A stretch of DNA of 61,962 bases, counting the filler, from Choristocarpus tenellus KU-1152 (lineage: Eukaryota > Protista > Phaeophyceae): assembly GCA_964200185.2 (NCBI GenBank). It is 11 parts of 11 records of this genome, joined end to end, with 100 filler letters (N's around TTAATTAATTAA, not from the genome) between each part and the next. Parts side by side here need not be neighbours in the genome. Positions count along the whole stretch, not along the records: positions 26,080 to 42,904 come from CAXNAD020000764.1; 10 more parts are not named here. One strand, given 5' to 3'. How positions within the stretch are numbered: the stretch's first letter is position 1; every line of letters starts with the position of its first letter. The position numbers were made by a program, and so were the translations under genes. This document shows, piece after piece, positions 23,118-42,904 of the stretch. The notes below the pieces were generated by a model. The model ran no database searches. It worked only from the letters and a program-made list of their open reading frames with translations, and was not told the origin of the DNA.

Positions 23118-26100
23118 GGGACGTAAGATTGAAGTGCCTCCAATCTGAATCGAGTTGACCGTTGACCACTCCCTTCTACAAAGTGGCGGGGGGTTGGGGG
23201 TGGTTGCGAAACTGGCGCTGGTTTCAGGCTTGTTATGGCATACAAAATGAATGAAATCGGCTAACAATCACCTGTACAATGATACACCATGGCTTGAAGA
23301 AGTGAGCTTGTACATGGCCTGGCAATCAATGAGCATAGCGTCACAGTTGTTTTAGTCGTGGAATTTTTTCTCCTGTGCGCGCTAGAAGGAGGGTGAGATA
23401 GGGGTTGGGGCGAACGGAGAACCTTCGCCATAATCTTTATACTCCCCTTCTGCAAGGCAGGTCGTAAGGAGTGTTCAACCCCCCTTCACCCCCTTCGACT
23501 GCGCACACCTTGCGCGTTTGGTCTACTGTAATTTTTAGTGTGTGTTGGTGGGTGGGTGCTGTATAGGTGAATTGTGGGGATATTGAAATGGAAATTGCAG
23601 TGGAAGGAGTAGTTACCATTCCACACTGTCAATATTGATGGACTGGAGCTTAGGGGTCTGGTTTGCTGCTGTCCAGACATGCTTCTGGCCTAGTGCAGTC
23701 GAAAGGTTCGTTTTTGGGATTGCAATTTTATTCTGTTTTTGCAGTGAACTAGTGGAGCAGGGCAGGCTGGTGGAATGGTGGAATGACAGAAGTGTCAGCT
23801 TGGTGATGTGTGGAATTTGTTGGCAATAAATAATAAAAAGGTTCAAGTACACAAAATACACTCGCCATTCTGTTTTGTGTGGGTGCACACTTATGACAAA
23901 AAGGTGTTCAATTATTTCTCCATTTGCACTTTCCTTTTCTCATGCATTCGTTGTTGTCGAATAACTTTGCTGACCTCTGAAATACATAACGGTGGGGATA
24001 AAGTGAGGTGATTTACGATTTCAGGGGTTTTACGTTCTGCAGCATTGATCACTGCACAACCCTTCGTCATTCACTCTAATTTGATGTAGGGAGCACAGGT
24101 GCATGGAGAAACAAGAGTATTGATGTCAATTCCACGCTACTGCCACTTCCAAGAAATTCTAGTGCAATCACAAAGGTGGAGAATCAAGTGAGTTAATACC
24201 CCCCAAGCAGTTTTGATCAACATGTGGTATGGGGGTGAAGAACTATGCATAGTGGCATGACTTGAGGATGGGAGACAGGTCACTTTCCTTCTTCCTGCTC
24301 TCTTTGTGTATTACTCCTGTTACCTGTTTTAGGCAGGTACTGTAAATATGGTATGACAATACTCACATTCTGCATTTCGAAAACTGAACCCTCAGTATGC
24401 CTGCCCTTGTCAAGTTGTTGAGAGGAGTGGGACAAGTATGTATTGTTTGTGCATTTTCCCAATCCTTAATTTTACTATTTTTCAACTTTGGTTACAACCA
24501 TTAAGGTCTTTCTACGATAGTGTTTCCTACAAATGAAGTTAGAAGTCTTGTTGAGCAAACAGAAATCAGTGGTAGTTTCAACATCTTTTCTTAGCAGTTT
24601 AGATCTAGTCAAATTTAGGATCAACAAGCAATCTCTTTTATTTCACCAGTGATCCTCTGCACTCCAAATAAACCCCTCTATTTGTGGTTGAAGCACGAAA
24701 CAATGCCTGCCCAAGGAACAGATATTGCATACATGGTTCCTCCAAAATGACCCACAATATTTATAAATGAATTTACAGAGACTTTTGGCCACAAGGTTAC
24801 ACAGTGACATCAATCGTTGGTTTGAGAAGGGAAGGCAAGGAGCTCAGTAGCAGCTACAAGAACCGTACACCCGAACCACTTGTCCTTCATTCAATCACCA
24901 GCCGACCATCCTTACAAGGTTCCCAACAATAGAGGCTTGTCCTTAAGTGACTGTCCTGCAACAAGCCCTGGGAGGAAGGCACTTACAGAAGGAATCAGTC
25001 ACAGAAAGGGTACAACAAGAGGATCGGCGAGTTGATGTTCCAGCACCACCTCTCCCCTGGCAGGTGATAGAATTTTTCCACTGCCCAACCCGCACATAGA
25101 ATTAACAACAGAAGTGCACAGACTTTTTTTGCTCCAAACTTCATATAGACACACCACACATGGGGTTGTGTGCGTGAGTACATACTCTCATGAGACATGC
25201 TCTCACAAGACAGGCAAGACAAACAGAAAAATCTAAAACAGAAAAAAAAGAAACGGGAGACAAAACACAGACACAAAAAACATCATTACCAACACGTTTC
25301 GTAACACCTCTGCTCTTTTCATGGCATGGCATGGTGTAAGTTGAGGGGGACTGTAGCACCGCAGGTATTCTAGTCACAGCACAACACCAGGCCAGGTGGA
25401 AACAGGCGTACAGCGTATATAGACAACCTCGTAGCTATGTGACATAAGAGGTATACTGCAGGTTGGCATGATCGCCAAGTGGCAGATACTACCAGGAAAG
25501 AACTGGAGATGATAGTCATAAAACCGTCAGTTCAATCTGTAACTCCTGTCAGTCAGCAGACCTCATAAGCCCCACACCCCAATACATCCTCATTGGAGTT
25601 GTTTCTCCATTCCCAGAAAACGTTTTTCCATCATAATACTACTTTTGTAGGGGATGGGGGGGGAGGGGGGGGGTACCGATGCAGTGCTGTCGATATGTGC
25701 CCAAGGGCAACTTCCTCTTCATCGAACATCAAGAATAATTCCCAGTAACATGTCCCTCCCCCCTGCTACAATAGCTCCCTGTTGCTTCCCCCACCACCTG
25801 ATCGAAAAACCAACTCGGAGCATCCCTAACCTTCCTCCTTGCCCCACACCATCCCCACCCACTACGACTTCAAGAACACTTGTCACAACACCCCGTCACA
25901 CCTGTCCCCCCCCCCCCCCCCCACCACCCACGCCCCGGGACAACAAAAAAAAACCCCCCGGGCCCGCTCGGCAAAGGGCNNNNNNNNNNNNNNNNNNNNN
26001 NNNNNNNNNNNNNNNNNNNNNNNTTAATTAATTAANNNNNNNNNNNNNNNNNNNNNNNNNNNNNNNNNNNNNNNNNNNNGGAACCTCACTCGGTACCAAG

Positions 26101-27073
26101 GTATAACGGTGTATGACATACGGCAATAACGGTATAATAACAAACATGCTTTCCACATGTAATATATTTTTATGCCCTCTGAATTTCTTCTATATTTGCA
26201 CTACAGTGAAAAAAGAAGGGAATAAAAACAAAAACAAAAAATCCTCTGGTGCCAACATGCTCCTTCAATCCTCCGGTAATATACTAGAGTTTGATATCAA
26301 CAAATAGGTGGGGGTGGCTCTCCCTTATTACGGAAGCAACATGGTTGTGGAGTGAAGGGGCGAGGTAGGACATAATTCCGTGATCAACGATGAGATACAT
26401 CAGCTATGTGTGACTGCTAGATGGTTGGAACGCACCTTCGTGTTAGACTTTTGTGTTGAATACGATTGTTCAAGGTTGTGAAATGTTTGATTTGAGAGGG
26501 TTGAAATTACGATTGAACCATGTGGTGGGGTTGTGACATGTGCTACCGATTCTACAAGTTCATACTCTGTCCCTATATATATTTTTGGTGTGACGTCACT
26601 GATGAACTGGACAATGTTGCGTAGTCGTGGAGGCACGTGTTAGTTGAGATCACGAGCAGTAAATTGCAATGCGAAAATCCATCATGAGGCATATGAACAA
26701 ATCCTGTGACTACCACTGATTAAGAACCTATAGGCTGCTGTATTACTGTTAAAAACGCGAAGTATTAGTCAAAAGAATTGAGAGGTAGGCAGGGTTGCAT
26801 TTTAAGGGTCCCAAGAAAAGGTAAAACATTTCATTTTGTAAATTAATTGCAGCAAAGAGTCTTTCTTTGATGAATTGTAGTGCCGTCACTTTATGTGTGG
26901 GAAGGGGAATATAAATTTTGTGTAGACGCTATTGCGCGCACAAATCAATGGAAATAGAGTGTGTATTGTGCAGGGTAAGAATGATGACTTGGAATGCAAA
27001 AGGGTCCAAACCTGCCTACCTCTCAATTGGCTTGCCTCTACGTCGTGGTAAAATGGGAAATTTTGAACTGTAA

Positions 27074-27434
27074 GAGTCAAAGTATCTTAGAGGGTAGAGC
27101 CGCGTCCGTTTGGGGGCCAAAATCCAATGTTGNNNNNNNNNNTCGGTTGTCGTCTTAAAGGTGTTTTTGAGCGATATGAGTTCACTAGAAGGACTAGCAC
27201 GAGCGCTCTCTTTCATGGGGCCAAAATCCAATGTTGCGATTTTGATGTATTTTTGGCTATTGTGTTTGTTAGGAAGTGTCGATATCCTTGTTCTGAACAC
27301 GCTCTTTCATAACATACACACTTTACCTACTTCGAAACATTTCGGAGTAGAATTAGTCTTTAAAAACCCGTGGGAAGCCAAGCCCCAAATGGACAAACAG
27401 GGCAAAATTCGTACCCAATAAGATACTTTCCATC
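27074..27434. mobile_element. MITE family A sequence spanning a 10-N scaffold gap (probably two partial copies)
   Basis: Left TIR at 27074; family body 27215-27430; the GGGGCCAAAATCCAATGTTG segment occurs on both sides of the gap. Confidence 0.8.
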
Positions 27435-29599
27435 CTAAACAAGGATTCTGTTTGGAGACAACTTACTTTTCTTTGCTTATTGCTCCTCTGTTAGTCTGCA
27501 ATTGTATACCCCTTTCACCGACAACAATATAGCGTTCAAGTCAGACTGTACAAAATGTTGTGCATGTCCTACTTGCTTTTCTTTAACACAAGTTGAAACG
27601 CGTAACATTATAGAATGTGCTATGCAAATCCATTTGTACTTCTTCAACATCATTATTTCAAAAGGTAGAAAGAGGGCTCAGAGGTTTTAGATATGACACA
27701 GAGCACCTACTTTACCTCTTTTGTAACCTACAACTAACAGATCCATACTCCACACCTCTCTCCTTGGTGCATTGTAACCTGTGCACCCCTCGTTTTTATG
27801 TCCCTGTGTTTCCCTTCTATATTAACTTCTCGCCCCCTCCTTCTTTGCTTGGCACTCGTTGGGTGTTGATTCAGAAGAGATTCGTCAACTGGTTGACGGA
27901 TTTAAAGCTGAAAATAGGGGATTGCTATACTACAAACGGAGAGCTCGTGTTGTATGTTATAAACTGTAGCAACTAGTCGGTAACTTTCGTCTTGTCTTGT
28001 TGATATGTTATGTCACGTGAGATATCATGAGAACTGATAAAATATGATGCTACACTTCGTTTCGAAATTCACTAACCCGCAAAATCAGATCAAATTAGAT
28101 TAGCTCAATGAACTACACTGCCTCATTGACTCCTAAGTCCTAGTATTTGATACCATAAATGGAAGGTAAAACTTCATGTCGTTTCAGTAGCGTATAATTC
28201 AGTTCTAAGTTGGGTACAAGCAAGACCTTGACTTGTAAAGCCCGGTTGAAATATTTATGTTATGTTATATTTGAAGAATATAACAATGAACTCAGCACAA
28301 AGAATGGAAAGTTGAGAAAATGTTACAATGGGTATAATGACATTCCCCTATTTAAACCGAGAAAATACAAAACTTAGGCACTGACTAACGATTATGATTG
28401 TGAAAACCCCTGTTCCTATGAAGCTAATGATTTTATTATCAATATTTGATCTTTCCATTCCTTCTTCATCTAAACAATCTGCAATACAGTTTGTTTCGTT
28501 GATTTGCTTACGAATATTTCACTTACATATTTCTTAACCTACTTGAGGAGTCATGCGGAAACAGGATGTAACTAAATAAAGTTTGAGATAACCAAAGGGA
28601 AGGGGTTGCGACAGTGTATCTGGCAATGGTGCTCGAGCTTGCCTTTCATCCCAACCTTTTTGTCCTGGTCTATAAAATGAAGACCCTAACTCCAGAGCTT
28701 GGAGTTAAGGTTTCAACTCTTCAAAAGAAATGTGTTACGATTTTCGACATTTCAATAGGTTTCAGTTCGATTAATTGAGAGTATAACTGAAAAAGTGAAG
28801 TTCAGCTTTAAAAAAATCACAATATTTAACCAGAAGTGTGACTGAACGTGTCAGAGGTAAGAGAACCACACAACCTAATCATTCGTCCAAAGGCTTCACT
28901 ACCCATAAAGCATTACAAATTCATGACTTGGGATCTGGCTCAGACCATAGACAAATGTTTGCACCTCCCGAGGGGCTCTATTCAAGTCAGGGAGCTTATT
29001 GCCTCCTGCACCAACAGCTCAACCAAGTTATTATATTTATTCTAACTCAATGCAGTTTAATTGGAAACTCTTTCGACTTACAGACCTAAAAAAACTGAGC
29101 AAGCCAAAGCAAATAATGACTGGCAGGGTAACCTGAAAGGTCTCTTGCTGCTCTGTTCCTCAAGAGTTCTCTAGCAATTTCTTCAGATGGGACAGGGCCT
29201 CAGAGTGATGGCTTTGTATAGCATTGTGGAAATGTTAAGAGCTCGCGCAGGTTGCTGTCGTCCAAAATTAGAGCCGGTACCCCCTTCCTATTAGTCTTCC
29301 TTCCTACCTATTAGAAGTACCCATTTACCTTTTGTGTCTCACACTAAAGCAATAGAAACTCTCACTCTTGTCTAAAATAAAACCTCTGCTCTACAACAAC
29401 AATATACCATTGTCTGGAAATTCCATATTATGTACCATAATTCCATGCTGGGGTACTGTCCAACTTAGTCACTGCTCCTTACCAAAAAAGGTCCTAGTGC
29501 CATGTAGCCTTTCGCAGAGAGGTTAAAGAAAATTTGTCGTCTAAAAAGACTCATCTATGAACAACATTGTTCCTGATGCCGTAGCTCAGGTCCTTAAAC

Positions 29600-29850
29600 C
29601 CAACTACTGCCATAGTCTTAACCTCAACACCTTCACTGTAGAAATATTCGGGCATCTTGGTACACAAGCAGAGCAGTTCCTGGATGAGGTGGCTATTCAT
29701 GCCGGGGGTGGTAGGGGGGCTGGGAGGATTAACGGGTAGGGAACAGTGAAGACACGCTTGCAACAGATTGTGTCCGTCACAGTACAATACAAGCGGTGAT
29801 TTGAGGCATGTCGTGCATTTCAAGCTAGAGACTCTGGAGCGAGTATGCAA
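29600..29850 (+). mobile_element. 3' fragment of a CRE/NeSL-like (RLE-type) non-LTR element
   Basis: TFTVEIFGHLGTQAEQFLDEVA...KTRLQQIVSVTVQ resembles the C-terminus of RLE-clade ORFs. Confidence 0.55.
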
Positions 29851-31409
29851 TATAGAACTTTTCAGAGTCGTGGAGCCTTTTTTCTAGACCGCCTTCATAG
29901 TGCAAGTTTTGGAGTAGTTTTCAGCTGTAGTACTTGTTTTAGTAGGTTTCTTGGTTACTTCATCCTTGATTATTCCCAACTGCAACACCGCAACACTACA
30001 ATACTACAAGACTACGTCACTACAACAACCCTGGTGTACCAGAGGTCGTTTGGTAAGCAACTCTGTTGTTGTTGTACTGTATCCATTGCCTTATATAGTC
30101 TGGAGTATGTCCCGCTTCTTGTTCCCTCCATGAAAACACTTGCAAAATTAGTGACCAAAATAGTATTCACTATCTATGGAGAATATATGTATTACAAATA
30201 TTAATAATTCTGGTATAGAGGGTCTTGACGAGGAGTTAAAATATCGCAAACTTTATCGTGCCCAGTTACATTTTACACAGATGTTGTCAAGTGAGGGGAC
30301 AAGAAGAAGCATGTAAATATATAGCAAAGACTACAAACACGACAAAAACAGAACTTGTTTTCCTTGCAACAATATCTAAACACGGTAACTCCCCTATGTG
30401 TGTATAAGGTGTTACTACTGTTTCTCGTATCGGACTTCTAGATTATGGTTTACCATTTGAAGCAACCTCAAACAGTAGGTTCTACAACTACAAAACATCG
30501 AGAAGTTCACCAACGACTCCACATCAGCAACATATACAATAACGAACATCACCACACCTGCAAACTTTACAGCACAAATCACATCTTCACTCCATAGCAT
30601 CATCTATCCATCATTTCGACCTACTTAACTAAACATTTGACCCCGTGAACCTGTGAACCCAACCAGTCAACCATTTCACAGCACCGATACGTATCAAGTC
30701 CATGTGAAACTACGTCCTTAAACCTAACTCAGATAAGAGAGACAATCAGCATTCATTTGATTCGAAACAACTGATCAACAACCCCGACAATCCTTCACCT
30801 TCAATCTTCTTCACCTCATCTCTACTACATCCACAATGAAGGACTGTGATATCCACCTATTTCCTGTAGTCTAACTTAATGGTTATAGTTCCCTGAGTAT
30901 TGATGCAATAACATGTGTTTGGTTTTGTGTTATTGGATCACTTTATCACATGCTTTCTCCAGACGACGAACCCAGATCATGTGTGTGGGGAACACACAAT
31001 GTGATGTCTATTGTAATAATGTATATTTTTGAATAGCAACAAATTGTTTCTCCCTGCACTGGATGATGATGAGAAAGTATTCCACTCTACACTTTTCCTC
31101 AATAATAGTGAAGGAGAAATTGTTGTACAATTGTATCACCGCATCGTTCCTTATGATATTTCCCGATCTCCAAAATATGTGTGATTTTCCATTGATCACT
31201 TGTAAATATATTGTCATATCGTCTGACATTTTTCTGATGCCAGGGGTGAAATCATGAATATATATATTTTAATTATTATGCCCTCTGAAATTCTAGAGAT
31301 GTGTAAGGAGGGAAACCAATTAGAACCGTTCACACGTCAATATAAGCCCTAAAGAAACAAAAGGTGTCACAAGTGTGAAAAGCATTATCCATTTGCTATT
31401 TTGCTATGT

Positions 31410-32200
31410 CACACCACTACCTTCCTGCCTCTCCAATCTACTTATTCCTGTGCCTCAGGGTGAAGAGCTAGGAAGGCATCCTAAGAATCCAACAAACCCC
31501 TCCGTGCCCATCTCCCTGGTGACCCCAGCTTAAAAGCATGACACGTCTAGAAAGTGCCACTTGTGTAGTTACTGAGAAAATTTGGTGCACCAGGATTTAA
31601 CCGTTCCTTTCCTGCTATATCCTCCGGTTCCTCTCCCCCCCACCATGTGTGTAGCCAGCTCATCCAGGAAGCATTCCCCTTGCTTGCCGAGGCGCCCAAA
31701 ACTTTCCCACCGCGAAGGCGTTGAGATCTATTTATTTTTATCCCTCTGACATTTTGCATATGTGTCAGGGGAAAAATCAACAACAATTTACATGTCAGAA
31801 TAAACCCTAAAAAAGTAATACTTGTCATAAATGTGAAAACATTAATCGATTCGCTATTTTACTACCAGTTATGCTACAGTGTTCCCTTCCCACCTATGCC
31901 TCTAACCTAGGTAGTCCTGTACTCGAGGGTGAGGGTCGAGGGAGGCATCCCACGAATCTAAACAAGTCCTTCCTTGCCCATCTCCCTGGTGTCTCCAGCT
32001 TAAAGGACATGACCCATCTGGATAGGGTTATCTGTGTTGTGACATGAACTATCTGTCGTAGACGGGATTTGACAGCCCCCTTCCTGACATAACCTCCTGT
32101 CCCTCTCCCCCCTACCGTGTGCGTATCTAGCTCATCCAGAAAACTTTCTGCTTACCTACCGACGTGCCCAAAGCTTTCCACTCCAAAGGTGTTGACATTA
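31410..32200 (-). mobile_element. Two further copies (about 31410-31725 and 31885-32200) of the same CRE-like 3' fragment
   Basis: The two are direct duplicates. The minus strand reads ELDTHGRGR..KSRLRQIVHVTTQ..VMSFKL, homologous to 29680-29825. Confidence 0.55.
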
Positions 32201-33306
32201 TTATGCTTTCGTGACAGTTTGTTTGCAGATGTGTGTAGTAAAAATCAGTTTTTTAATATATATTATTATTATTATGATATTTATTTGAAGGGTCAATAAC
32301 AAAATATATTTATCAGAATTGTCAATGTTGTCAAAGCAAAATGAAAACCTCAACTATAATAATATATTTGTGACATTTTATTTCCTTAGGGGTACTACCG
32401 ACATGTGAATAATTCTGATTGGTGTTCCCCCTCACACATCTGGAAAATATTTGAGGGCATAATAATGAAATAATATTTTATGTAACATCTACAATATTTC
32501 AGATTTTATAGTAATATATAATAAATAACTCATAATATATAATATCTATAACCACTCGAGCTTGTGAGGGGGGGTTCAAAATCAGTGGTTGGAGGAGGGG
32601 TATGAGGTTGTGCCTTCGTTCTGAACGGCGCAACAAAATTAAATATCCTGCAACAATATGAGTTGAGTATAAGTTACCACCCTTTGTGGTTTAGTATGGA
32701 ATTCAATAGTCTTTGGAGGGTATAATAATATTATAATTATTAATATAATCTTTCGTGGATATATACATAATGCATATATATAGTTTTCATTGGATTCCTC
32801 GTTGACACATCTGCAAAATGTCAGAGGGCATAATAATAAAATATATAGATACTATTATGGGTATAAATATAATCTTTCTTATAATCTATACTGTATCACC
32901 ATAAATATGAAAAGAGAAAGATGGATGGAGGGGAAATATTATATTATTATTATACTTTTGACATTTTGTAGATCAGGGAAAATGAAGAAATATTAATATT
33001 GATACTCAGAATGTGAGGATAAGAATATATCTCCACTCTCCAAAATCTCCACTTTGTGTATGTGACATGATAGAAATATTATCGAGAATTGAACATGGCA
33101 AACTCCCACAACCCTAAACTGTATGAAATATCCCGAGTTCTGGTGTTTTTCAAGGAAGAAATACTTCTATGCTGCACCAATGAAGCAAAAATAGTTCAAC
33201 GAGTTGCGTTCACAGAGATTTTCGCAATATGGTCTTCGACTGGGTGCGCATTTTGTGAAGCAGATGAGAGACCTGGGTACAGTTAATTAAGATTTCCTTC
33301 GGCGAA

Positions 33307-33536
33307 ATGCAGCCAAATTTGAGTAGCCTGGGCTGCCAGAGTCATCTTTTACGAGTGTTGTTAGGAGCATGCTGTTTGTGTATGGTGTCAAGTCAAGTTG
33401 TTTATAATACTCCAGTCACAGTGGAGGCTTATGGACAGGATGGGGAGTATCTCAGCAGCCTATGGGGCGACACTTCGAGCTGGAAGCAGTCCGACATTCA
33501 TGCTGGGTTCTATTATCACCTCGACGCCAAATACTA
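33307..33536 (+). CDS. Probable first (signal-peptide) exon of the solute-binding receptor gene
   Basis: MQPNLSSLGCQSHLLRVLLGACCLCMVSS-Q hydrophobic leader; ends at a strong GTGAGT donor. The join to downstream exons was not resolved. Confidence 0.45.
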
Positions 33537-34200
33537 GTGAGTCCGAGGGGGATCACTGTTTGCTCTAACCCATTTGAATTTCTTTGTCCGCTGAAGGCGT
33601 GGGGAGGTGTAGGGACAATAGAGGTACGTTACCCGTGGAGCGCTTCATCTCTAGTGCAGAACTGTCGATAAAATGAGGTTTCAAGATTATTGTCAGAGGA
33701 AGTGTGGCTCTATAGGGAATGAGCGAAGGACGGCGGTTCAACCTACTGTTTTGCACCTAGGTGATTTTCTTCATCAACCGCAACACTAAGCGAGGCAGTA
33801 AACGGTGTTTAATACCCATCGTTTGTGCCAACAAAAATAATCACCACGTCCTATGATCGATGGTCATGTTAGCCATCATGACAAAACAACTGGTCATTAT
33901 TAACTTTGCGAGGTATCGAGACACCTCCATGCCCTTTCCCCGACGTTGTTTCAGTTTCGCAACGGTCGCACGTCCCTTCTCTTGCCGTTGAAAACAATTG
34001 TGTCACAGGCGAAGGATTTGAAATTGCTCTACTTGCAGCTGGTAAACGAGCGATGAATTATCGATTATGATTTTCCCCCTAAATAACCCGGAGGTCTAAG
34101 ATAAAATGCATAATGCTCTGCTTCCTCCCTGCAGTCTTGCGTGGATATTTTTGGTGGCAGTATAGCCCATGGATGGGTGGATTGATACGTTTGTCTCTAG

Positions 34201-37200
34201 GATCGCTACTGGAGTAGAAGGCGTGAAGATTTGTTACCAAACAACCCAGATTTTCCCGCTCTATTCAGAGTGCGCACACATAATTTACTGATCAAGTGTG
34301 AGTACCAAATCTTACCCCTCGCCTTCCATTCGTCACACAGCCCTTCCTCAAAACGTCTATATACACTCCCTCGTAAACCTTTTCGCAAGTCTTGTGGGTA
34401 CAGGCCCAGAGGTTATGGAATTTTGGAATCCATTCGAAGAGGATAGGGGTGGAGGGGAGCCTACGGCGGTTCACCTTAAGGCAGTCATGGATTTCGTCTT
34501 AGAGGTTAGTGCCTTGTCAAGGTGGATTTCCCACTATTCTTGGAATATTCATAGTCTTGTGACATGTCGTGAGATTTTTCAGGCTCAATGTATCTGGGGG
34601 GGAGACCACTGTTCATTCGGGGCCCTTTTTTCCATTTCGCGATTTTTGGGTGATTTGGTTGTATGCGTCTGACGGATAATGTAAGTTAACTTCTCCTGGT
34701 CAGAACCCGAAAGGACACCCTGGTGTAGACCCCCCCCCTCCACAGATACTTTGGACCTTAATTTTCCCACATGCCTAGAGAATTTTTTTCCTCCTACGTA
34801 AGTAGTACTTTCCTAGATATGATGTCAATGTCACTTGGGTCCACAGCTTTACTGTTGGAGTGTGCAATTGTTGAAACACCACAACAGCAATTGGTGAAGA
34901 AATGAGGGCTGCTTTGTTACCCTGATTAATAACATTTTGAACCACTTAAGTGTAATGTGCTTTTCAAGTCTCCAGATTATGATTCAATTTGCATCCAGTG
35001 GCGAGGCTCTCCACTTGCACGATGGTCAAAAGTTGAGATATTTCAGCTACTGATTTGTATCTAATTAGTGCACAAATGTTGTAATGCACCATCGCATCTC
35101 CAACATGTCGCCAACATGTCGCCTCAAGTGGATCAAAGCACAGTCCTATGGCGATCCCTCTGGCAAAGCTTTGTTCTGCTAACTGTTATGCATGGCCAGT
35201 AAGCCAGTTAAACAGGTTGGCACATTGTGCTTGTGTCCTACCATGCTAGGCATTACCTCTTGTTGCAATTTGATAGTGTGGTCGATTTGGCTACTACCAC
35301 TACGCTTGAAAATTCCAAGCATACTCTGTCTTCAATGAGAAGAAAAATACTCTTGTGGAATGCTTATTTTGGAACTCAATGGCACTTCTGTTGCATAATC
35401 TAGGAACGGGGAGGGGCAGATCAAGCAGATACCTTGACCGTGAAGGTGATCAACAGGGGATGGGGGGGGGTTGTTTCTGACACCGTGTGTGATGGAACTG
35501 AGGATTGCCCGGCGCTGGTCATGATTGGAACAACACAGGTATGCTACTGCAACAATTATTTCTTGCGTGCACTGGGGCTCATACTATTTTTTTTCTTGTC
35601 TGGTGATGGTTTGCCAAAGATATGGATCGCTCTTAATGCTGCAACCATCCGTACACTATACAAGGACTTCTTCTTTACAAAAGAGGTCGCTGCTATCCCC
35701 CTGAGAATAACAAAAAGCAGATGTCAACAATGGCATGGTGAGCTCAGCTGGTCTGTCCGTTTCCATTCGACGAGCATCTTCGAATAGATGATATCTACCA
35801 AACATTTGTAGTGCCAGATAGGATGTTCATGTGTGCTCTTGTTTGCTCTGCTCGATCCATGGTGACAGTCCCTGTTCATTTTTGTGCGCGTTGAACCTTC
35901 CCATTCATCTACTCTGTGGCTGCCCTGAAGGTGGCAACACGGTATGGCCATGGTGATGTGGCCTCCCTCAACAGTTACCTTGATGAATTTCAGGCAGAAT
36001 TTGGCTACCCTCTCTATGATGATGTGAGTGCTGCCGTTTGGCATTCAATAGTTATCTGTATTTTGCTATTGAACGACACCGATGGTCATGCACTACATGG
36101 AACTGTGGCCTTTTCCAAGTCACAGGTGCTCTCCTTCCAACAAGCACGTAATGCATGGCATTTGTTGCAACTGTGAAGGCCTCACTCTAGTACATGCACT
36201 TGATGTGAATGAGTTACTCTTAGTGTGTGCACTCTTTGGCTTTGCTGTTCAGTGTGAGAGCATACTGTAGGGCCATTGAGTACATTTTCAATATGTCAAT
36301 AGGTAGACCCGTTCCACTCTTCACCTTCACGAAGGCACAGATGGAGTTTATCATACCTTGTCATGTGTGTGGGCATGAGACACTTGTCTTTTCTGCGGTT
36401 GCTTTGTTCGAACTTGTCCACTTTGTTATCGCATTGATGGCATCTTATTCAAGCTCACCTGCCTACTCCTCTCTGCATCTCGATGTGTATTGCAGTTCAT
36501 CAAGTATTACTTCTACGACTTCAATAAGGCTGGTTCATGGATTGCGGTACCATTGGTATCTGACATTAGAGTGCTTGCATTCAACAAGACAACCTTTGAC
36601 AGGTGAAGTCTTGATGACAGGTCTTGGGTGCTTCAATGTTTTGAAACGGTGGTGGCATATGTGAACAAATTCTACCTCGAGGCGGATTGCTTCTTCTTTT
36701 TTTCACTAATTCTTTCAGTTTGCTGAATCTCTGCTTGCAGCCTTGGACTTGAATATCCTCCCCCAGAGGGCGCATGGACCGACCCGTACTCATCCTCCTG
36801 GACATGGGAAGTGTTTGCTGAAGTGAGTCTTCGAGAGTACATTGTCTTGTGTTAACATCCAGAGTCTGCAGACTAATGAGAGAAATTTAGAACAATTGAT
36901 GGCTTCTTTTTGTTGTCTTTGGTATCGAATTTTGTTGTCTTTAGTTCCTCTTGATGGCATACAAGTCGAATCTCTTGTTCGCATTTGTCATATTGTGTGT
37001 GTCTTTATCTTGCACTCTTCTTTTACACGCACTTAAACTGCAATGAAACATGCGCAAAACCCCTCAACAAGTTCTTGCCGGGAGACGGTGATACTGGCGA
37101 CTGTATTTTAAACACTTACGTGATTGTTTTTTGTTTACCTTTGCTTTATTCTCTTTTTTTTTTGTTTGGTTCACAATGTCGCTGCTGTAATTGCAAAGGC

Positions 37201-40200
37201 ACGAAAATCCCCTGACCAAGAACTCTGCAACTATGAAAGCTATGCACTCTCTCTTGGGTAGACAAGTGTAAAGTGTTACAACCCAAAGAAAACAGGGAGT
37301 CAAATGCCCAGCGGAAATTTGGTGGCTTTGCTCTTGGCAGTGATGCCGAAGCGCGATAAGCAACTCCTGATTGGCTCGTTGTCTGTATTTCTGTTCTTAT
37401 CTCTGTGTTGTATTGGAGAATAGCATGGAATAATCACTCAAGCATTGAAGTACTTGGTAGTGTACTTTGTGGTAATCCTATGATGCAAATTTGGTGTGTT
37501 TAAGTAGAGGCAATATCAAGCGGAACCTTTGAATAGTTCTGTACAGGTTCTCCTCGTTTGCATAAATGACGATGATATTGTGTGACTGACTTTGGAGTCT
37601 GACAAACCTTGCATGCTTGCAGTAAAAAAAAAAAACTTGCATTAAAAAAAGCATGTTTCGGTGCATGCCCCAAGACTCTGGGTGTGGGTACATAGGTGCT
37701 CTCAGGACATGAGATCAGCCAATTGATCAACTTCAAGTCACTCACAAAACTCCAAGAATTATGAGGGTACCTGCGGGCTTTCCCACAGAGATGCTTCACC
37801 ATTTTGAGTGTTTGCTGCTTTTGTCATGTCTTAAACATCACGATGATATTGTGATTGACAATCCTACTGCTGTTGTATGCTTTAAATGCCAGTGTCATTT
37901 CTATGGCGAATACAGTATTGATCTATTCGTAGCCCTGTGGAGTGCGCCCATTCTTGTGCCACATTCCCTCTGGCATGGAAAAAACGACCCTTCTCACCTA
38001 CAATCCCCTCCCCCCGCTCAGCTTGCTGAAAAGATCACGAGTGCGACAGGAGAACCCGGATTCTACTTCCCCGGAGGATGGGACGAGGAACTGAAACTTA
38101 GCATGATGATTGGGCGTAACTGGGGTGCCACCCTCTATGCTAAGGTTTGGCATCCTTCCCGGCCCTGGTTTTGTGTTGAAGTGCCCTCATTGTTTTGTGA
38201 GAGGGGACTTTGTCAAGTTGTCAAGGTATCATAAATGTATTACACTGTGCCTACAAGCGTCAAGTGGTCATATTTTTTTGTGTCATCAAAGTACTGCTAA
38301 TGTCATGTTACTGCAGAAGTGATGCTTCATTCCCCTACTTCATTGTGCTCTTTTTTGTATTACTTGTAATATATGTTACCCCTTCACACAGCTGCACCTG
38401 TTCCTTCGATGTAGCAAAGCAAAGGAACTGTAATGCAAAAGTGTGGATTACTGACATCTGCTCAACAATCACATGCAAATTCGCATGTGTTAAATAAGAC
38501 AAAAAGTAAATGGGTGCAGTAAGTGGGAGAAAGAAGTTTGTTTGTCAGGCAGTCACCTCTACTCAAACTCATCTCTATCAACATTGATATCCCCCCGCCT
38601 TCCCCTACCCGAATAAAACCTACCGTTGGCTTGAGGAAGGATGATGTAAATGAAGACATCAAGAGGTCCGCACTTCAAGATGATGGCAAGTTTGCTGTTG
38701 CTATATCAAGCATCATGCTGCCCATGCTCACGAAAGGTGTTCTGGTAAGTCCCTCATGATTGTTTTTTGCTTTGTTCAATGAGCGTAGTCCATAGTAATG
38801 AGTCAAAGTATCTTAAAGGGTAGAGCCATGCCCGTTTGGGGGCTAAAATCCAATGTCGTGATTTGATGTAATTTTGGCTATCATGTTTGTTAGGAAGTTT
38901 CGATATCCTTGTTCTGGGCAGACCTTTTCGAAACGTACACATTTTACCTACTCCAAAAAATTTCAGAGTAGGTAAAATATCGTTAAAAACCCATGGGAAG
39001 CCAAGCCCCAAACGGACAAACACGGCAAAATTCTTAACCTCTAAGATACTTTCACTCTAATGTATGCTCACACCGGAAGCTTTACATGCTTACACCTGTT
39101 GTGAGCTCCCTACACCTTTCCCCTGGCTATTGAAAACAACGCCAAAATCCCTGTCTAACATGCAAATGGCCTTCCAAAATACAGCACGACAATAGCTACT
39201 GCATGGGATGACATGTGTGCATTGATCTCAATCACTCTTGTTTCTCCAGTTCAGATTTGAACTCAACCACGTTTTGCACTCGTATATGATATTCTTGGAT
39301 CTTTGATGTTTGCTCAAGCATAACAACTTTTGCATATCCCAACTATTGTACTACTAAAAGTGTCCGAAATAGATTCCCTTTATGAGCAGCAACACTACTG
39401 TCTGGATCAAGCATTCCACGAAATTTTGCTCACCTGATCTTGACTCTTTTTTCTGCCATCTATTGCACACAGGGTCCTTCTGATGGTTTTATACCTACAC
39501 ACTCCAGGGAGTTTGACACGTGGAACAACAGTGATCTCATCTTAGATCCAACCCAAGCTACATCCAACTTTTGTTGTCGGGACATCAATCTTGAGAAGGT
39601 GATGCAAAATGATAGAAAAAGAAACTTCTTTCTGTTGCGATTTCTTTTTTCAAGATTTGAAAGGGGGATTTCGAGTGTGCATATGTTGGTGTTGTTGAAA
39701 CCAGGGGGGGAATCATAGGGTCCTTGTTAGGTGTCAAAAGCGTGAATATATTATGTTATGCCAGGTTCATTTGAGACCTATCCGATACATCTAGAAACCA
39801 TTTGAAGTGTGATGGGTTGGTACTTAGAATTGTGTTTTTTCCCCTTATGGTTGGTTGGACCTGACTGGCCTTCAAATGTGGAAGAAGTAGGGGTAGACAT
39901 CCCTTTCCTCTTCCTTGGGCATTCTCCCATTCTTTCAACTTTTGTCCTTGACCGTCCCTCATCCTCTCTGTCCTGCTTATATATTTTATTTCCAGGACTC
40001 TGTCGTCGGTATGTCCATCCTTCCACCATCGTTCTTCAATGAGTGGGAGGCAGCTAACCAAACAGAGATGAAAATGGCTTTTCTTCCAGGGTGAGATTTC
40101 GCACCACGTTTCCAGCGTCAGTGTCAATCATAGGACAAGATGGGATAGGTACTGAGTGTATGCAGGTAGTATTTCTTAGTTGTACTTTGTGGAATTGTTG

Positions 40201-42548
40201 CGAAGATTGCGCTATGTACTCAAGTGTTGAATGTTGTTCAGTACATTATGTTTGTTCATAATTATGAATTGGCTCTTTAGCAGTGCTACTGGAGGTCATT
40301 GGTCAGTTGGACTCCGGTCAACTATTCTGTACAATTATGTTGTGAACACCTTGCAACAAGAAAGGAATATAAGCCAAAACCGACCGAAACACAAGTCAAC
40401 ACCAGTCCTTGAATTCTTCTTGATAGTACAAAGAGATGGAGACAAAGTCTCCCCCAACTACAACGACCAAAACCAATCCAAACTCCATCTGTTTCCGTGT
40501 TAATCCTGTCGATATGGAGTCACTCTTGAACCCATTATTATTGTAACAATTTTCAGAACATCTCTGTTGACGTTTTCTGTCTTGGTGGTACCTTCTGAAA
40601 CACCCCAGTCGGGATTCTTTCCTTGGTGGATCGGGTCTTTTCATTCCTGAGCGTACGACCACAAGGCAGCGGGATTTAGGGTGGTCTCTCCTAAAGAGCA
40701 TGGTAAACATGGCTACAGAGTATGGATTGGTGGTAAGGTCACCACCACCATTTGAGGTAAGTGTTTGCTATGGTAGGTTAGTACGAAATGTTGCCCCAAC
40801 TCCACCTATTTGTGAGGTACTCTGTCATAGGACTAAGGATTTTCAACTGGCTCAGATTACTGGACAAGTTGCTGACTCCATATTTTGTCTCCTTGTCTGG
40901 ACTTTGTATTAACCGCTTTTTCAGTCTACAATTAGAATGACACACAAGTGGGCCTGTTATTTGGACGTCTAATAGGGATGTACAGGTTCTACAGGATTTA
41001 TCCAAAACACATCAACTTTACCCTTATCCTGTGCTTCTGCCCCCCTCATTACCTTTTTCTGATTTTATTTTAATCAACAGAACAAGCTGCTGGAAGAGCC
41101 CTGGATCTCAGATGCGTGGGCCACCTCGATCACTCAACTCAGAGCTTCTGTCCCCCCTCAGTGTGAGCCGAGAAAGAAACTAATTACTGCTGCAATAGCT
41201 TTAGCAGATGACGTTTTCTAGAGCTCCGAGTTATAGAATTTGGTACCGTTCAGACCTAGTCAAGCTCAATTCATTTTTCGTCAATCACAGCAGTCACAAG
41301 CTCTTGAGGAAATACAAAACATGAGAATTACCCCCCAACTGACCACGACTCCCTCTCTTCTCCTAACCTTTGGGAACCTTAATCAATTCCCCCATTGCAG
41401 ACCCAGAGCCATCCTTCTCTGAAATGGGTGAGATTGAGAGTGTCAAGCCTTTTAGGCTCATGTGGATGGAGGTAAGACTAGCCGCAGGAAATTGCCAGTG
41501 CTAGAGTAATTTGTTTTTGGAGTACGGGAGGTCAGAAACCATTGAGTACATCTTGTATCAAGTGGAACAATCACTAGAGTTTGTACAGAGTATGGTAATG
41601 CTATGGCAACAAGAGTTTTTTGTTCAAAACATTGAATCAGATGGACAAAGTCTTGCCATGGGAGTGCAATGTTTTTGACTATAATCTTTTCTTATCTGTA
41701 TGTGAAATACGACAGGGGGGTAGAAGCCTCCCGTTGGTTGTACTTTCAAGAGTGAAATTTTTGTCAAACGCAAAATGTGGAGACTTGAAAAAGAGTCAGT
41801 TGTATGACAGAGATAACGCCCTCTAATCACATCCTATCCCAATTTCATCAGATGAAATACAAGAGCGTGAGTGTAGATATTGGAGTGAACCGTACGTCAG
41901 CCATCCTGGACAATATATTTGAGCCTGAGTGAGTGCCATGCCAAGGTTGACATTGACCATACTTACGCTAGGATCTCCACTGTTCATCTCCCCACTACAT
42001 TATACTTGCATGGATTTCTCCGTCCTATTCCACTCTGCTGTGACGTCTACAAATACCTCATATACAAACTTCCTCTAAACGTTTCTTGACCAACACAACC
42101 TGTGATCCACACGTAAGACCCTCAGTGCACATGCAGAAGGTGCTCTGTGCATTTGGCTTCTGCTCCATCACACAAGAGTATGTTTTGCCTCCATTGTTTC
42201 TGTTCATGCTCGCCTCCTTCACCATACTTTTGCAGTGAAACATCTTTGCATTATTAGTTTATTTCCTCCGTCTGGTCCTGTGATATTATGGACTAGAGTA
42301 CAACTTCTCGTTGCCACTCCACATGGAAGAAAACAATGATAAACAAAGTAGGCTCGAGTATTTAAATATACGTGCCAATAAGCACATTCCATCCCCTTCT
42401 CCCTTCTGTGTTGATTGCTCCATTAAGTTGCCTGGAGGGTATCAGTAATTTGGCATGTGTTCCATGCAAGCCAGAGAGTTTCCACTTCAATATCTCTTCC
42501 TGCGAGTCAGCCACCCAAAGGCGGCTAGTGACATTCTACATTGACGAG
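34201..42548 (+). CDS. Extracellular solute-binding protein (family 1, periplasmic-binding type II) with Cys-rich linker; probable class C GPCR-like receptor; 3' end beyond contig
   Basis: 15 GT-AG exons splice in frame (1563 nt): 34201-34297, 34404-34504, 35404-35538, 35931-36023, 36496-36602, 36741-36822, 38022-38144, 38640-38744, 39473-39598, 39996-40090, 40609-40756, 41081-41162, 41401-41471, 41852-41928, 42428-42548. Motifs: CPALVMIGTTQVA, WIAVPLVSDIRVLAFNKTTFDSLGLEYPP, WTWEVFAELAEKIT, FLGGSGLFIP..GWSLLKSM. Confidence 0.85.
34582..34757. mobile_element. MITE family B copy in an intron
   Basis: GGCTCAATGTATCTGGGGG ... CACAGATACTTTGGACC; flanks TTCA/TTAA (imperfect 4-bp TSD). Confidence 0.75.
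38800..39057. mobile_element. MITE family A copy in an intron, TSD TAAT
   Basis: GAGTCAAAGTATCTTAAAGGG ... CTCTAAGATACTTTCACTC; TAAT on both sides. Confidence 0.92.
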
Positions 42549-42830
42549 GTGAGCTACTTGTTAGAGAACCTAAGCTTTAGTCTAACACTGATGTCGGGAT
42601 ATTTCTTCTGTTCTAAGTAGTATACGGTCAGGGATGCATACCTCAGTCACTAGCCCTTCGGTTTGTGCATCGCTCTATTTCCATGCTGTTCCAATGCAAC
42701 CTAGAAAATCGTGACCTGTTTAACTAACCTGCTCATGCCATTCAATTACACACAGCTCTTCTGTGAACTGCAACACCCATCCATATTTCCCAAGACTATC
42801 AGGCAGAAGTCAAGTTCATGTCACAGCACT

Positions 42831-42904
42831 GAATGAAAGTATCGTAGAGGGTACAAGTTTTGCCCTGTTTGTCCATTTGGGGCTTGGCTTCCCATGGGTT
42901 CTTT
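42831..42904. mobile_element. MITE family A end at contig break
   Basis: GAATGAAAGTATCGTAGAGGGTACAAGTTTTGCCCTGTTTGTCC. Confidence 0.85.

What the first reader, a model, noticed from the sequence alone, without database searches (positions are those of the whole stretch)
33307..42548. Hidden micro-exon gene: bacterial sugar-binding-protein domain in a probable algal cell-surface receptor
Seen: 15 short exons (71-148 nt) with GT-AG ends and matching phases splice into a stop-free reading frame of about 521 aa, and a signal-peptide-like exon lies upstream. Established: the motif series (MEFW; VKVINRGW; CPALVMIGTTQ; WIAVPLVSDIRVLAFNKTTF..LGL..PP..TW..F.E.AEKIT; VGMSI; FLGGSGL.IP..W.L) follows the order of family-1 extracellular solute-binding proteins of prokaryotic carbohydrate ABC importers. 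Canonical class C GPCRs instead use a type I Venus-flytrap domain, and SBP-7TM fusions are reported from anaerobic gut fungi. Inference: this is a fully intronised, long-domesticated SBP used as the ligand-sensing ectodomain of a sugar/oligosaccharide receptor in a stramenopile alga, a sensing system I do not recall being characterised in this lineage.
Basis: partly seen in the sequence, partly recalled or inferred. Interest (0 to 1): 0.88.

Follow-up and report, generated by a model that had tools for sequence, protein, structure and literature searches.

The report
Algal receptor with sugar-binding-protein ectodomain
This is the front two-thirds of an intact-looking, intron-rich algal gene whose outer part derives from bacterial sugar-binding proteins and whose closest relatives are seven-helix cell-surface receptors, a receptor design already described in fungi and a rhizarian protist, although I found no report of what any of them senses.

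Summary
The gene is real. Fifteen GT-AG exons at 33307-42548 (+) give 570 stop-free codons; the piece ends in a high-copy repeat inside intron 15, so the gene is cut. Tested exon by exon, 13 exons match, in order, a family whose full-length members carry SBP_bac_1/8 plus 7tm_3. Nearest are Phaeothamnion (CAM9149949.1) and Chattonella proteins; intron 1 is shared with Phaeothamnion. A model of the Phaeothamnion ectodomain has the type II sugar-SBP fold (Z 25). No 7TM lies in the piece: the last exon stops inside a six-cysteine stalk, about 25-30 residues before TM1 of the relatives. A GABA-B-like class C receptor is inferred (about 0.85); a carbohydrate ligand is likely (about 0.6) but untested; no RNA run exists. 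The architecture is published for Allomyces, gut fungi and Plasmodiophora, and ochrophyte relatives are in public databases unnamed. New member of a known kind.

The parts
33307..33536 (+). Exon 1: start codon, signal-peptide-like hydrophobic stretch (residues about 14-32) and start of the family's small N-terminal beta extension; donor phase 2
   Evidence: (hydropathy 1.95); intron position shared with the Phaeothamnion gene; homology alone weak
34390..34504 (+). Exon 2 (corrected acceptor): start of the SBP domain, MEFW motif
   Evidence: (26.6 bits)
35404..35538 (+). Exon 3: pocket Trp (GW), family Cys pair, GTT motif
   Evidence: 46.2 bits
35931..36023 (+). Exon 4
   Evidence: 18.1 bits
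36496..36602 (+). Exon 5: most conserved block (AVPL..D.R), first hinge strand
   Evidence: used as query, 74% identical to the Chattonella protein
36741..36822 (+). Exon 6: PPP and W.W motifs
   Evidence: 31.2 bits
38022..38144 (+). Exon 7: WDEELKL motif
   Evidence: 37.5 bits
38640..38744 (+). Exon 8: fills the gap between exons 7 and 9; acceptor uncertain
   Evidence: not significant alone
39473..39598 (+). Exon 9
   Evidence: 15.2 bits
39996..40090 (+). Exon 10
   Evidence: 12.2 bits
40609..40756 (+). Exon 11: FLGG motif, second hinge region
   Evidence: 45.3 bits
41081..41162 (+). Exon 12
   Evidence: 15.8 bits
41401..41471 (+). Exon 13
   Evidence: 24.4 bits
41852..41928 (+). Exon 14: last helix of the SBP domain
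   Evidence: 8.6 bits
42428..42548 (+). Exon 15: first four of six cysteines of the membrane-proximal stalk; ends at a phase-0 GTGAGC donor; the gene continues beyond the piece
   Evidence: (8.9 bits)
42831..42903 (.). High-copy interspersed repeat in intron 15, at which the piece and the public contigs end

Best explanation
An intact-looking nuclear gene of an ochrophyte alga for a class C-like (GABA-B-like 7tm_3) cell-surface receptor. Layout: signal peptide, small beta extension, type II solute-binding domain of the family-1 sugar-SBP kind (about 460 aa), six-cysteine stalk, then (outside the piece) seven helices. Likely working: a small extracellular ligand, most likely a glycoside or oligosaccharide, binds in the cleft between the two lobes; the lobes close; the disulphide-braced stalk passes the movement to the 7TM bundle, which acts on a heterotrimeric G protein. 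Shown here: exon structure, open frame, family membership of the ectodomain and stalk, fold and 7tm_3 in the closest relatives. Inferred: the 7TM of this gene (about 0.85), sugar ligand (about 0.6), lobe closure (by analogy with bacterial SBPs), G-protein coupling (about 0.6), expression.
For: Exon 5 alone retrieves 13 related eukaryote-type proteins among 15 hits. Exons tile positions 56-526 of a profile of these relatives almost without gap. Summed per-exon scores: Phaeothamnion 1204, Chattonella 1182 and its close relative 1153, all others 826 or less. These three carry 7tm_3 at E 1e-44 and 4e-35, nearest in the PDB to GABA-B2, E 7e-20; two come from transcriptomes, one an uninterrupted 911-codon frame. 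The relative's ectodomain model matches sugar SBPs: Foldseek E 5e-14, VIA Z 25.2 with 5YSB over 362 residues; the family profile hits 21 PDB sequences, sugar- and glycerophosphate-binding proteins, best Lin1841 E 2e-16. Trp, GTT, D/E-x-R and LGG of Lin1841 align with the family and are kept in exons 3, 5 and 11. Exon 15 matches the stalk and stops before its last two Cys. Intron 1 is at the same codon and phase as in Phaeothamnion. Stramenopiles hold most GPCR pathway parts (PMC3971589; six G-alpha genes in Ectocarpus, PMC3879662).
Against: No 7TM in the piece; no RNA; the window protein itself was not folded. Identity to solved SBPs is only 13-18%, and the top Foldseek hits bind a dinucleotide, others glycerophosphocholine, so the fold does not fix the ligand. 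Whether stramenopile G-alpha needs a receptor is disputed (PMC3971589, discussing Bradford 2013), and one relative ends in a weak RGS match.
Confidence: 0.8

Rival explanations
1. Same receptor, but its ligand is not a sugar (a nucleotide, glycerophosphodiester or other small solute), or it binds nothing and works as a partner subunit, as GABA-B2 does.
For: Best Foldseek hits are a dinucleotide-binding protein; UgpB ranks high by fold and sequence; identity to any solved SBP is under 20%. The family has diverged in eukaryotes for a long time.
Against: Best profile hit and best VIA hit are the beta-1,2-glucooligosaccharide binder; most top rows bind oligosaccharides; the pocket-side Trp and GTT are kept.
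Confidence: 0.3
2. A 7TM protein with another output, such as a 7TM-RGS that switches off a self-activating G-alpha.
For: Relative P0012 has this ectodomain, a hydrophobic multi-helix region and a weak C-terminal RGS match (E 0.002, below cut-off).
Against: P0012 is distant (summed exon score 723 against about 1200); none of the three closest relatives has an RGS match.
Confidence: 0.07
3. A secreted or singly anchored SBP without 7TM, as also reported in gut fungi, that holds sugars at the surface; reading through the last donor gives a 23-residue tail and a stop at 42618.
For: Such proteins exist in gut fungi (PMC5168858); the 7TM is not in the piece.
Against: The read-through tail is only mildly hydrophobic (1.0), cuts the stalk before two conserved Cys and skips a GTGAGC donor like the other donors of the gene; every close full-length relative has 7tm_3.
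Confidence: 0.06
4. A recently silenced gene or pseudogene.
For: No RNA evidence; repeats inserted in introns 8 and 15.
Against: 570 codons without a stop, 14 canonical introns, exon GC 0.49 against intron 0.43, conserved motifs kept; the four single-copy differences listed from public contigs all lie in introns (too few to be significant).
Confidence: 0.05

Closest known systems
Unnamed ochrophyte SBP-7tm_3 proteins: Phaeothamnion confervicola CAM9149949.1, Chattonella subsalsa EP00638 P015322 and a close MMETSP relative
   Same: Colinear match over 13-15 exons, roughly half the residues identical in the aligned blocks; extra Cys pair at the start of the stalk; intron 1 shared with Phaeothamnion.
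   Different: 14 introns in the ectodomain against 3 in Phaeothamnion, only one shared; two Cys kept in most relatives (290 and 517 of CAM9149949.1) are both Ser here, probably a lost disulphide (inference); 7TM not visible.
Type II SBP-class C GPCR fusions of early-diverging fungi (Allomyces, PMC3251606; Neocallimastigomycota, PMC5168858) and Plasmodiophora brassicae (PMC4815078)
   Same: Same architecture in the relatives; exon 5 retrieves Paraphysoderma and Piromyces proteins directly; no ANF or nine-cysteine domain.
   Different: Other supergroup; the ochrophyte-containing branch is separate in a tree of the relatives (97/99). Whether the Plasmodiophora proteins are the same sub-family was not tested.
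Diatom class C GPCRs with PBP domains (Phaeodactylum tricornutum, PMC3727952)
   Same: Stramenopile 7tm_3 receptors, three with N-termini similar to sugar ABC binding proteins.
   Different: Drawn there as PBP1, shorter, without a Cys-rich region; no named diatom protein came up in my searches, so probably a separate fusion (inference).
Bacterial family-1 sugar SBPs (Lin1841/LiSO-BP 5YSB, MalE, UgpB, GacH)
   Same: Type II fold (Z 24-25, rmsd about 3.2 on the relative's model); W, GTT, E/D-x-R and LGG motifs.
   Different: 13-24% identity; no ABC permease or ATPase nearby; cleavable-type signal, five N-glycosylation sequons, disulphides, beta extension and stalk added.
Metazoan class C GPCRs (GABA-B, mGluR, taste receptors)
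   Same: 7tm_3 of the relatives is nearest to GABA-B2; large two-lobed ectodomain.
   Different: Type II domain in place of the type I ANF Venus flytrap; the stalk is not NCD3G and weakly resembles the juxtamembrane Cys module of ELAPOR1.

Membership tests
Eukaryotic type II SBP-7tm_3 receptors | Ectodomain homologous to family members over its whole length | tested here: met
   13 of 15 exons significant and colinear against a profile of relatives; tblastn
Eukaryotic type II SBP-7tm_3 receptors | Signal peptide and Cys-rich stalk before the membrane | tested here: met
   hydrophobic stretch in exon 1 (hydropathy only); exon 15 aligns to the stalk, three invariant columns
Eukaryotic type II SBP-7tm_3 receptors | C-terminal 7tm_3 domain | tested here: inconclusive
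   absent from the piece, which ends first; present in all close full-length relatives
Family-1 solute-binding proteins (SBP_bac_1/8) | Pfam match and type II periplasmic-binding fold | tested here: met
   met through relatives; single exons too short for Pfam, exon 5 leans to SBP_bac_1 in the Atlas at 0.87 (lead only); joined protein not tested
Prokaryotic ABC importer binding proteins | Encoded with permease and ATPase genes, intronless, lipoprotein or periplasmic | tested here: not met
   14 spliceosomal introns, no such genes in the piece
Family-1 solute-binding proteins (SBP_bac_1/8) | Binds a carbohydrate | not testable with these tools
   motif conservation only
Canonical (metazoan) class C GPCR | Type I Venus flytrap (ANF_receptor), with or without NCD3G | tested here: not met
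   neither Pfam family in any relative; fold is type II
Canonical (metazoan) class C GPCR | Dimer that activates a heterotrimeric G protein | not testable with these tools
   needs experiment
Micro-exon genes | Exons of a few to about 50 nt (usual definition, own knowledge) | tested here: not met
   exons are 71-230 nt

The most novel reading that the evidence does not exclude
The ochrophyte branch of this family is a true carbohydrate receptor that lets these algae sense glucan oligosaccharides (their own wall or storage breakdown products, or bacterial beta-1,2-glucans) through G proteins: the first ligand-defined GPCR of the raphidophyte-phaeothamniophyte-brown algal line.
Probability: 0.2. 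Interest if true: 0.7.

Novelty: new member of a known kind. Interest (0 to 1): 0.36.

Why it matters
The design is not new, but I found no ligand reported for any member, and nothing on the ochrophyte members in the papers I could search. The ectodomain is a self-contained SBP that can be expressed and screened, so the family offers a practical route to what non-animal class C receptors sense, and to whether algae detect oligosaccharides from neighbours, bacteria or their own walls. The Phaeothamnion or Chattonella proteins, which are complete, are better test objects than this cut gene. This locus adds one more ochrophyte member, with heavy intron gain or retention.

Tried and rejected
Pfam on 16 single exons: nothing real; PDB and plasmid searches with exon 5: none; exons are too short. 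RNA runs: none on record. The homologue search with the alignment returned only its first member, so the family's range is undersampled and absence from annotated brown algae is not shown. Candidate exons at 33660, 34135 and 34201 and the 34404 acceptor were rejected: a stop at or soon after the junction and no homology. The other frame at 42475-42541 was rejected: it stops and does not match the stalk. Recent transfer from bacteria into this alga rejected: best bacterial match of a relative is 24% identical, E 3e-6, against 25-44% and E below 1e-42 among the eukaryote-type proteins. The Lin1841 structure paper was not held, so pocket residues come from an alignment and a later paper. Two low-complexity hits (P0009, P0010) were ignored.

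Full report
Scope and limits. Only places 26080-42904 were used. Following the operators' note, the spliced model was tested exon by exon, by reference; the joined protein was not searched, folded or put in a tree, so domain, fold and tree results come from database relatives. No RNA run holds the stretch; two DNA runs of one study do.

The observation. Listing AG and GT sites around each gives a chain in which all phases fit. Its 5' end is wrong. The signal exon 33307-33536 ends in phase 2; joined to 34201 or 34404 it forms TAG; joined to 34390 it forms Tyr and continues with the residues that follow the same Tyr in the relatives. The Phaeothamnion gene has its first intron in that very codon, also phase 2. 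The corrected model has 15 exons, 1710 nt, 570 codons, no stop, 14 GT-AG introns of 138-1199 nt (mean 538), exon GC 0.49 against 0.43 in introns. Exons of 71-230 nt are short but not micro-exons.

More than chance. Exon 5 alone found 15 proteins among 1.84 billion, best E 5e-8 and 74% identity; two are low-complexity noise. Against a profile built from the relatives only, 13 exons score 8.6-66.9 bits and tile profile positions 56-526 with gaps of 0-4 at most junctions (138|139, 169|170, 204|206, 232|234, 372|375, 422|425, 449|451, 473|474). Exon 5 is circular in this test, the others are not. The 13 best of 745 six-frame segments are these exons; the best minus-strand segment has 1.9 bits; 34201-34296 has no match. 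Exons 1 and 8 are not significant alone but align at the expected places; the acceptor of exon 8 is the weakest site.

What it is. The full-length relatives carry SBP_bac_1 or SBP_bac_8 followed by 7tm_3. Named ones are from Chattonella subsalsa, Phaeothamnion confervicola, Paraphysoderma sedebokerense and Piromyces; others are unnamed, some on plainly eukaryotic contigs. Summed per-exon scores put Phaeothamnion (1204) and the two Chattonella-like proteins (1182, 1153) well ahead of the rest (826 or less; a Listeria SBP 404). In a tree of the relatives these three group with two unnamed proteins (97/99), and an extra Cys pair at the start of the stalk is shared by the full-length members of that group and by exon 15. 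The source is therefore most likely an ochrophyte; it was not identified further. A model of the Phaeothamnion ectodomain (pLDDT 69) shows a small beta extension, then residues 67-526 with the type II periplasmic-binding fold: Foldseek E 5e-14, VIA Z 25.2, rmsd 3.2, 362 residues with the Listeria beta-1,2-glucooligosaccharide binder 5YSB, tied with other oligosaccharide binders and UgpB. The family profile also ranks that protein first by sequence (E 2e-16). Its Trp, GTT, E-x-R and LGG align with columns that are invariant or nearly so in the family and are kept in exons 3, 5 and 11. By my offset of the chain numbering the Trp lies in the loop near residue 70 that lines the pocket in that structure (PMC13731917); this is an inference. 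The 7TM of the Phaeothamnion protein is nearest to GABA-B2 (E 7e-20).

What is missing. Exon 15 holds four of the six stalk cysteines and ends at a good donor about 25-30 residues before TM1 of the relatives. No 7TM segment is in any frame of the piece. The piece ends in a repeat that also lies in intron 8 and at 27074-27430; its summed contig depth is above 100,000 against about 20 for the gene, and the public contigs stop at 42863. The receptor part is thus inferred from relatives.

How it most likely works. Ligand in the cleft, lobe closure (shown for bacterial SBPs such as Lin1841, PMC13731917), transmission through the disulphide-braced stalk to a GABA-B-like 7TM, output through a heterotrimeric G protein, parts of which stramenopiles have (PMC3971589, PMC3879662). 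I put the 7TM at about 0.85, a carbohydrate ligand at about 0.6 and direct G-protein activation at about 0.6. Rivals: a non-sugar ligand or ligand-free partner subunit (top Foldseek rows bind a dinucleotide); a 7TM-RGS output as hinted by one distant relative; an SBP without 7TM; a silent gene. A model of the stalk alone best matches the juxtamembrane Cys module of ELAPOR1 in two searches (E 0.013; Z 4.7, rmsd 2.1, 46 residues, 28% identity): weak, but same position next to the membrane, and not the nine-cysteine domain.

Origin. Relatives of eukaryotic type are 25-44% identical to each other at E below 1e-42 and share features absent from bacterial SBPs, while the best plasmid-borne bacterial match is 24% at E 3e-6, in a sugar ABC operon with glycoside hydrolases. 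One ancient fusion or transfer between eukaryotes cannot be told apart with one bacterial outgroup.

What is known. SBP_bac_1 on 7tm_3 was reported in eight Allomyces proteins (PMC3251606), in about half of some 100 gut-fungal class C receptors (PMC5168858) and in Plasmodiophora (PMC4815078). Diatom class C receptors with sugar-ABC-like binding domains were reported in 2013 (PMC3727952). I found no paper on the raphidophyte or phaeothamniophyte members, and none giving a ligand; the library searched lacks most subscription journals.

Verdict. A real gene, correctly recognised in kind, with a corrected 5' end and an unseen 3' end. It is a new ochrophyte member of a described, functionally uncharacterised receptor architecture. 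Interest 0.36; a defined glucan ligand would raise it to about 0.7.

Noticed in passing
window 27074-27430, 38800-39057, 42831-42903: Copies of one very high-copy interspersed repeat of roughly 250-350 nt (84-91% alike, both orientations; summed contig depth above 100,000 against about 20 for unique DNA); the copy near 27134 holds an assembly gap. Probably a non-autonomous transposon.
   Followed up: partly
window 29560-29862 (+), tail near 29985-30030: Broken reading frame (two stops) followed by short tandem CTA-like repeats; from memory it resembles the C-terminal end of non-LTR retrotransposons common in brown algal genomes. A lead to the organism, not tested.
   Followed up: partly
window 31209-32878: Cluster of degenerate inverted (59-104 nt, 75-78%) and direct (44-115 nt, spacing about 470) repeats just upstream of the gene, in AT-rich DNA; likely nested transposon remnants.
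   Followed up: no
window exon 8 (38640-38744) and exon 14 (41852-41928): Two cysteines kept in most relatives are both serine here, suggesting the paired loss of one disulphide.
   Followed up: partly
P0012, locus L006 8001-12335: A distant relative joins the same SBP ectodomain and a multi-helix membrane region to a weak C-terminal RGS match (E 0.002): a possible SBP-7TM-RGS receptor in an unnamed eukaryote.
   Followed up: no
P0004 residues 539-586 (stalk); window 42428-42548: The stalk model best matches the juxtamembrane Cys-rich module of ELAPOR1 (residues 857-902) in two fold searches, weakly.
   Followed up: partly
L005 201-4677: The intronless relative P0006 lies 46 nt downstream of a hybrid histidine kinase gene (HisKA, HATPase, response regulator) on a compact contig of an unnamed organism.
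   Followed up: no
window 34135-34297: Intron 1 holds exon-like stretches with good splice signals and open frames that fit neither the phase nor the family; possibly decayed or alternative exons.
   Followed up: partly
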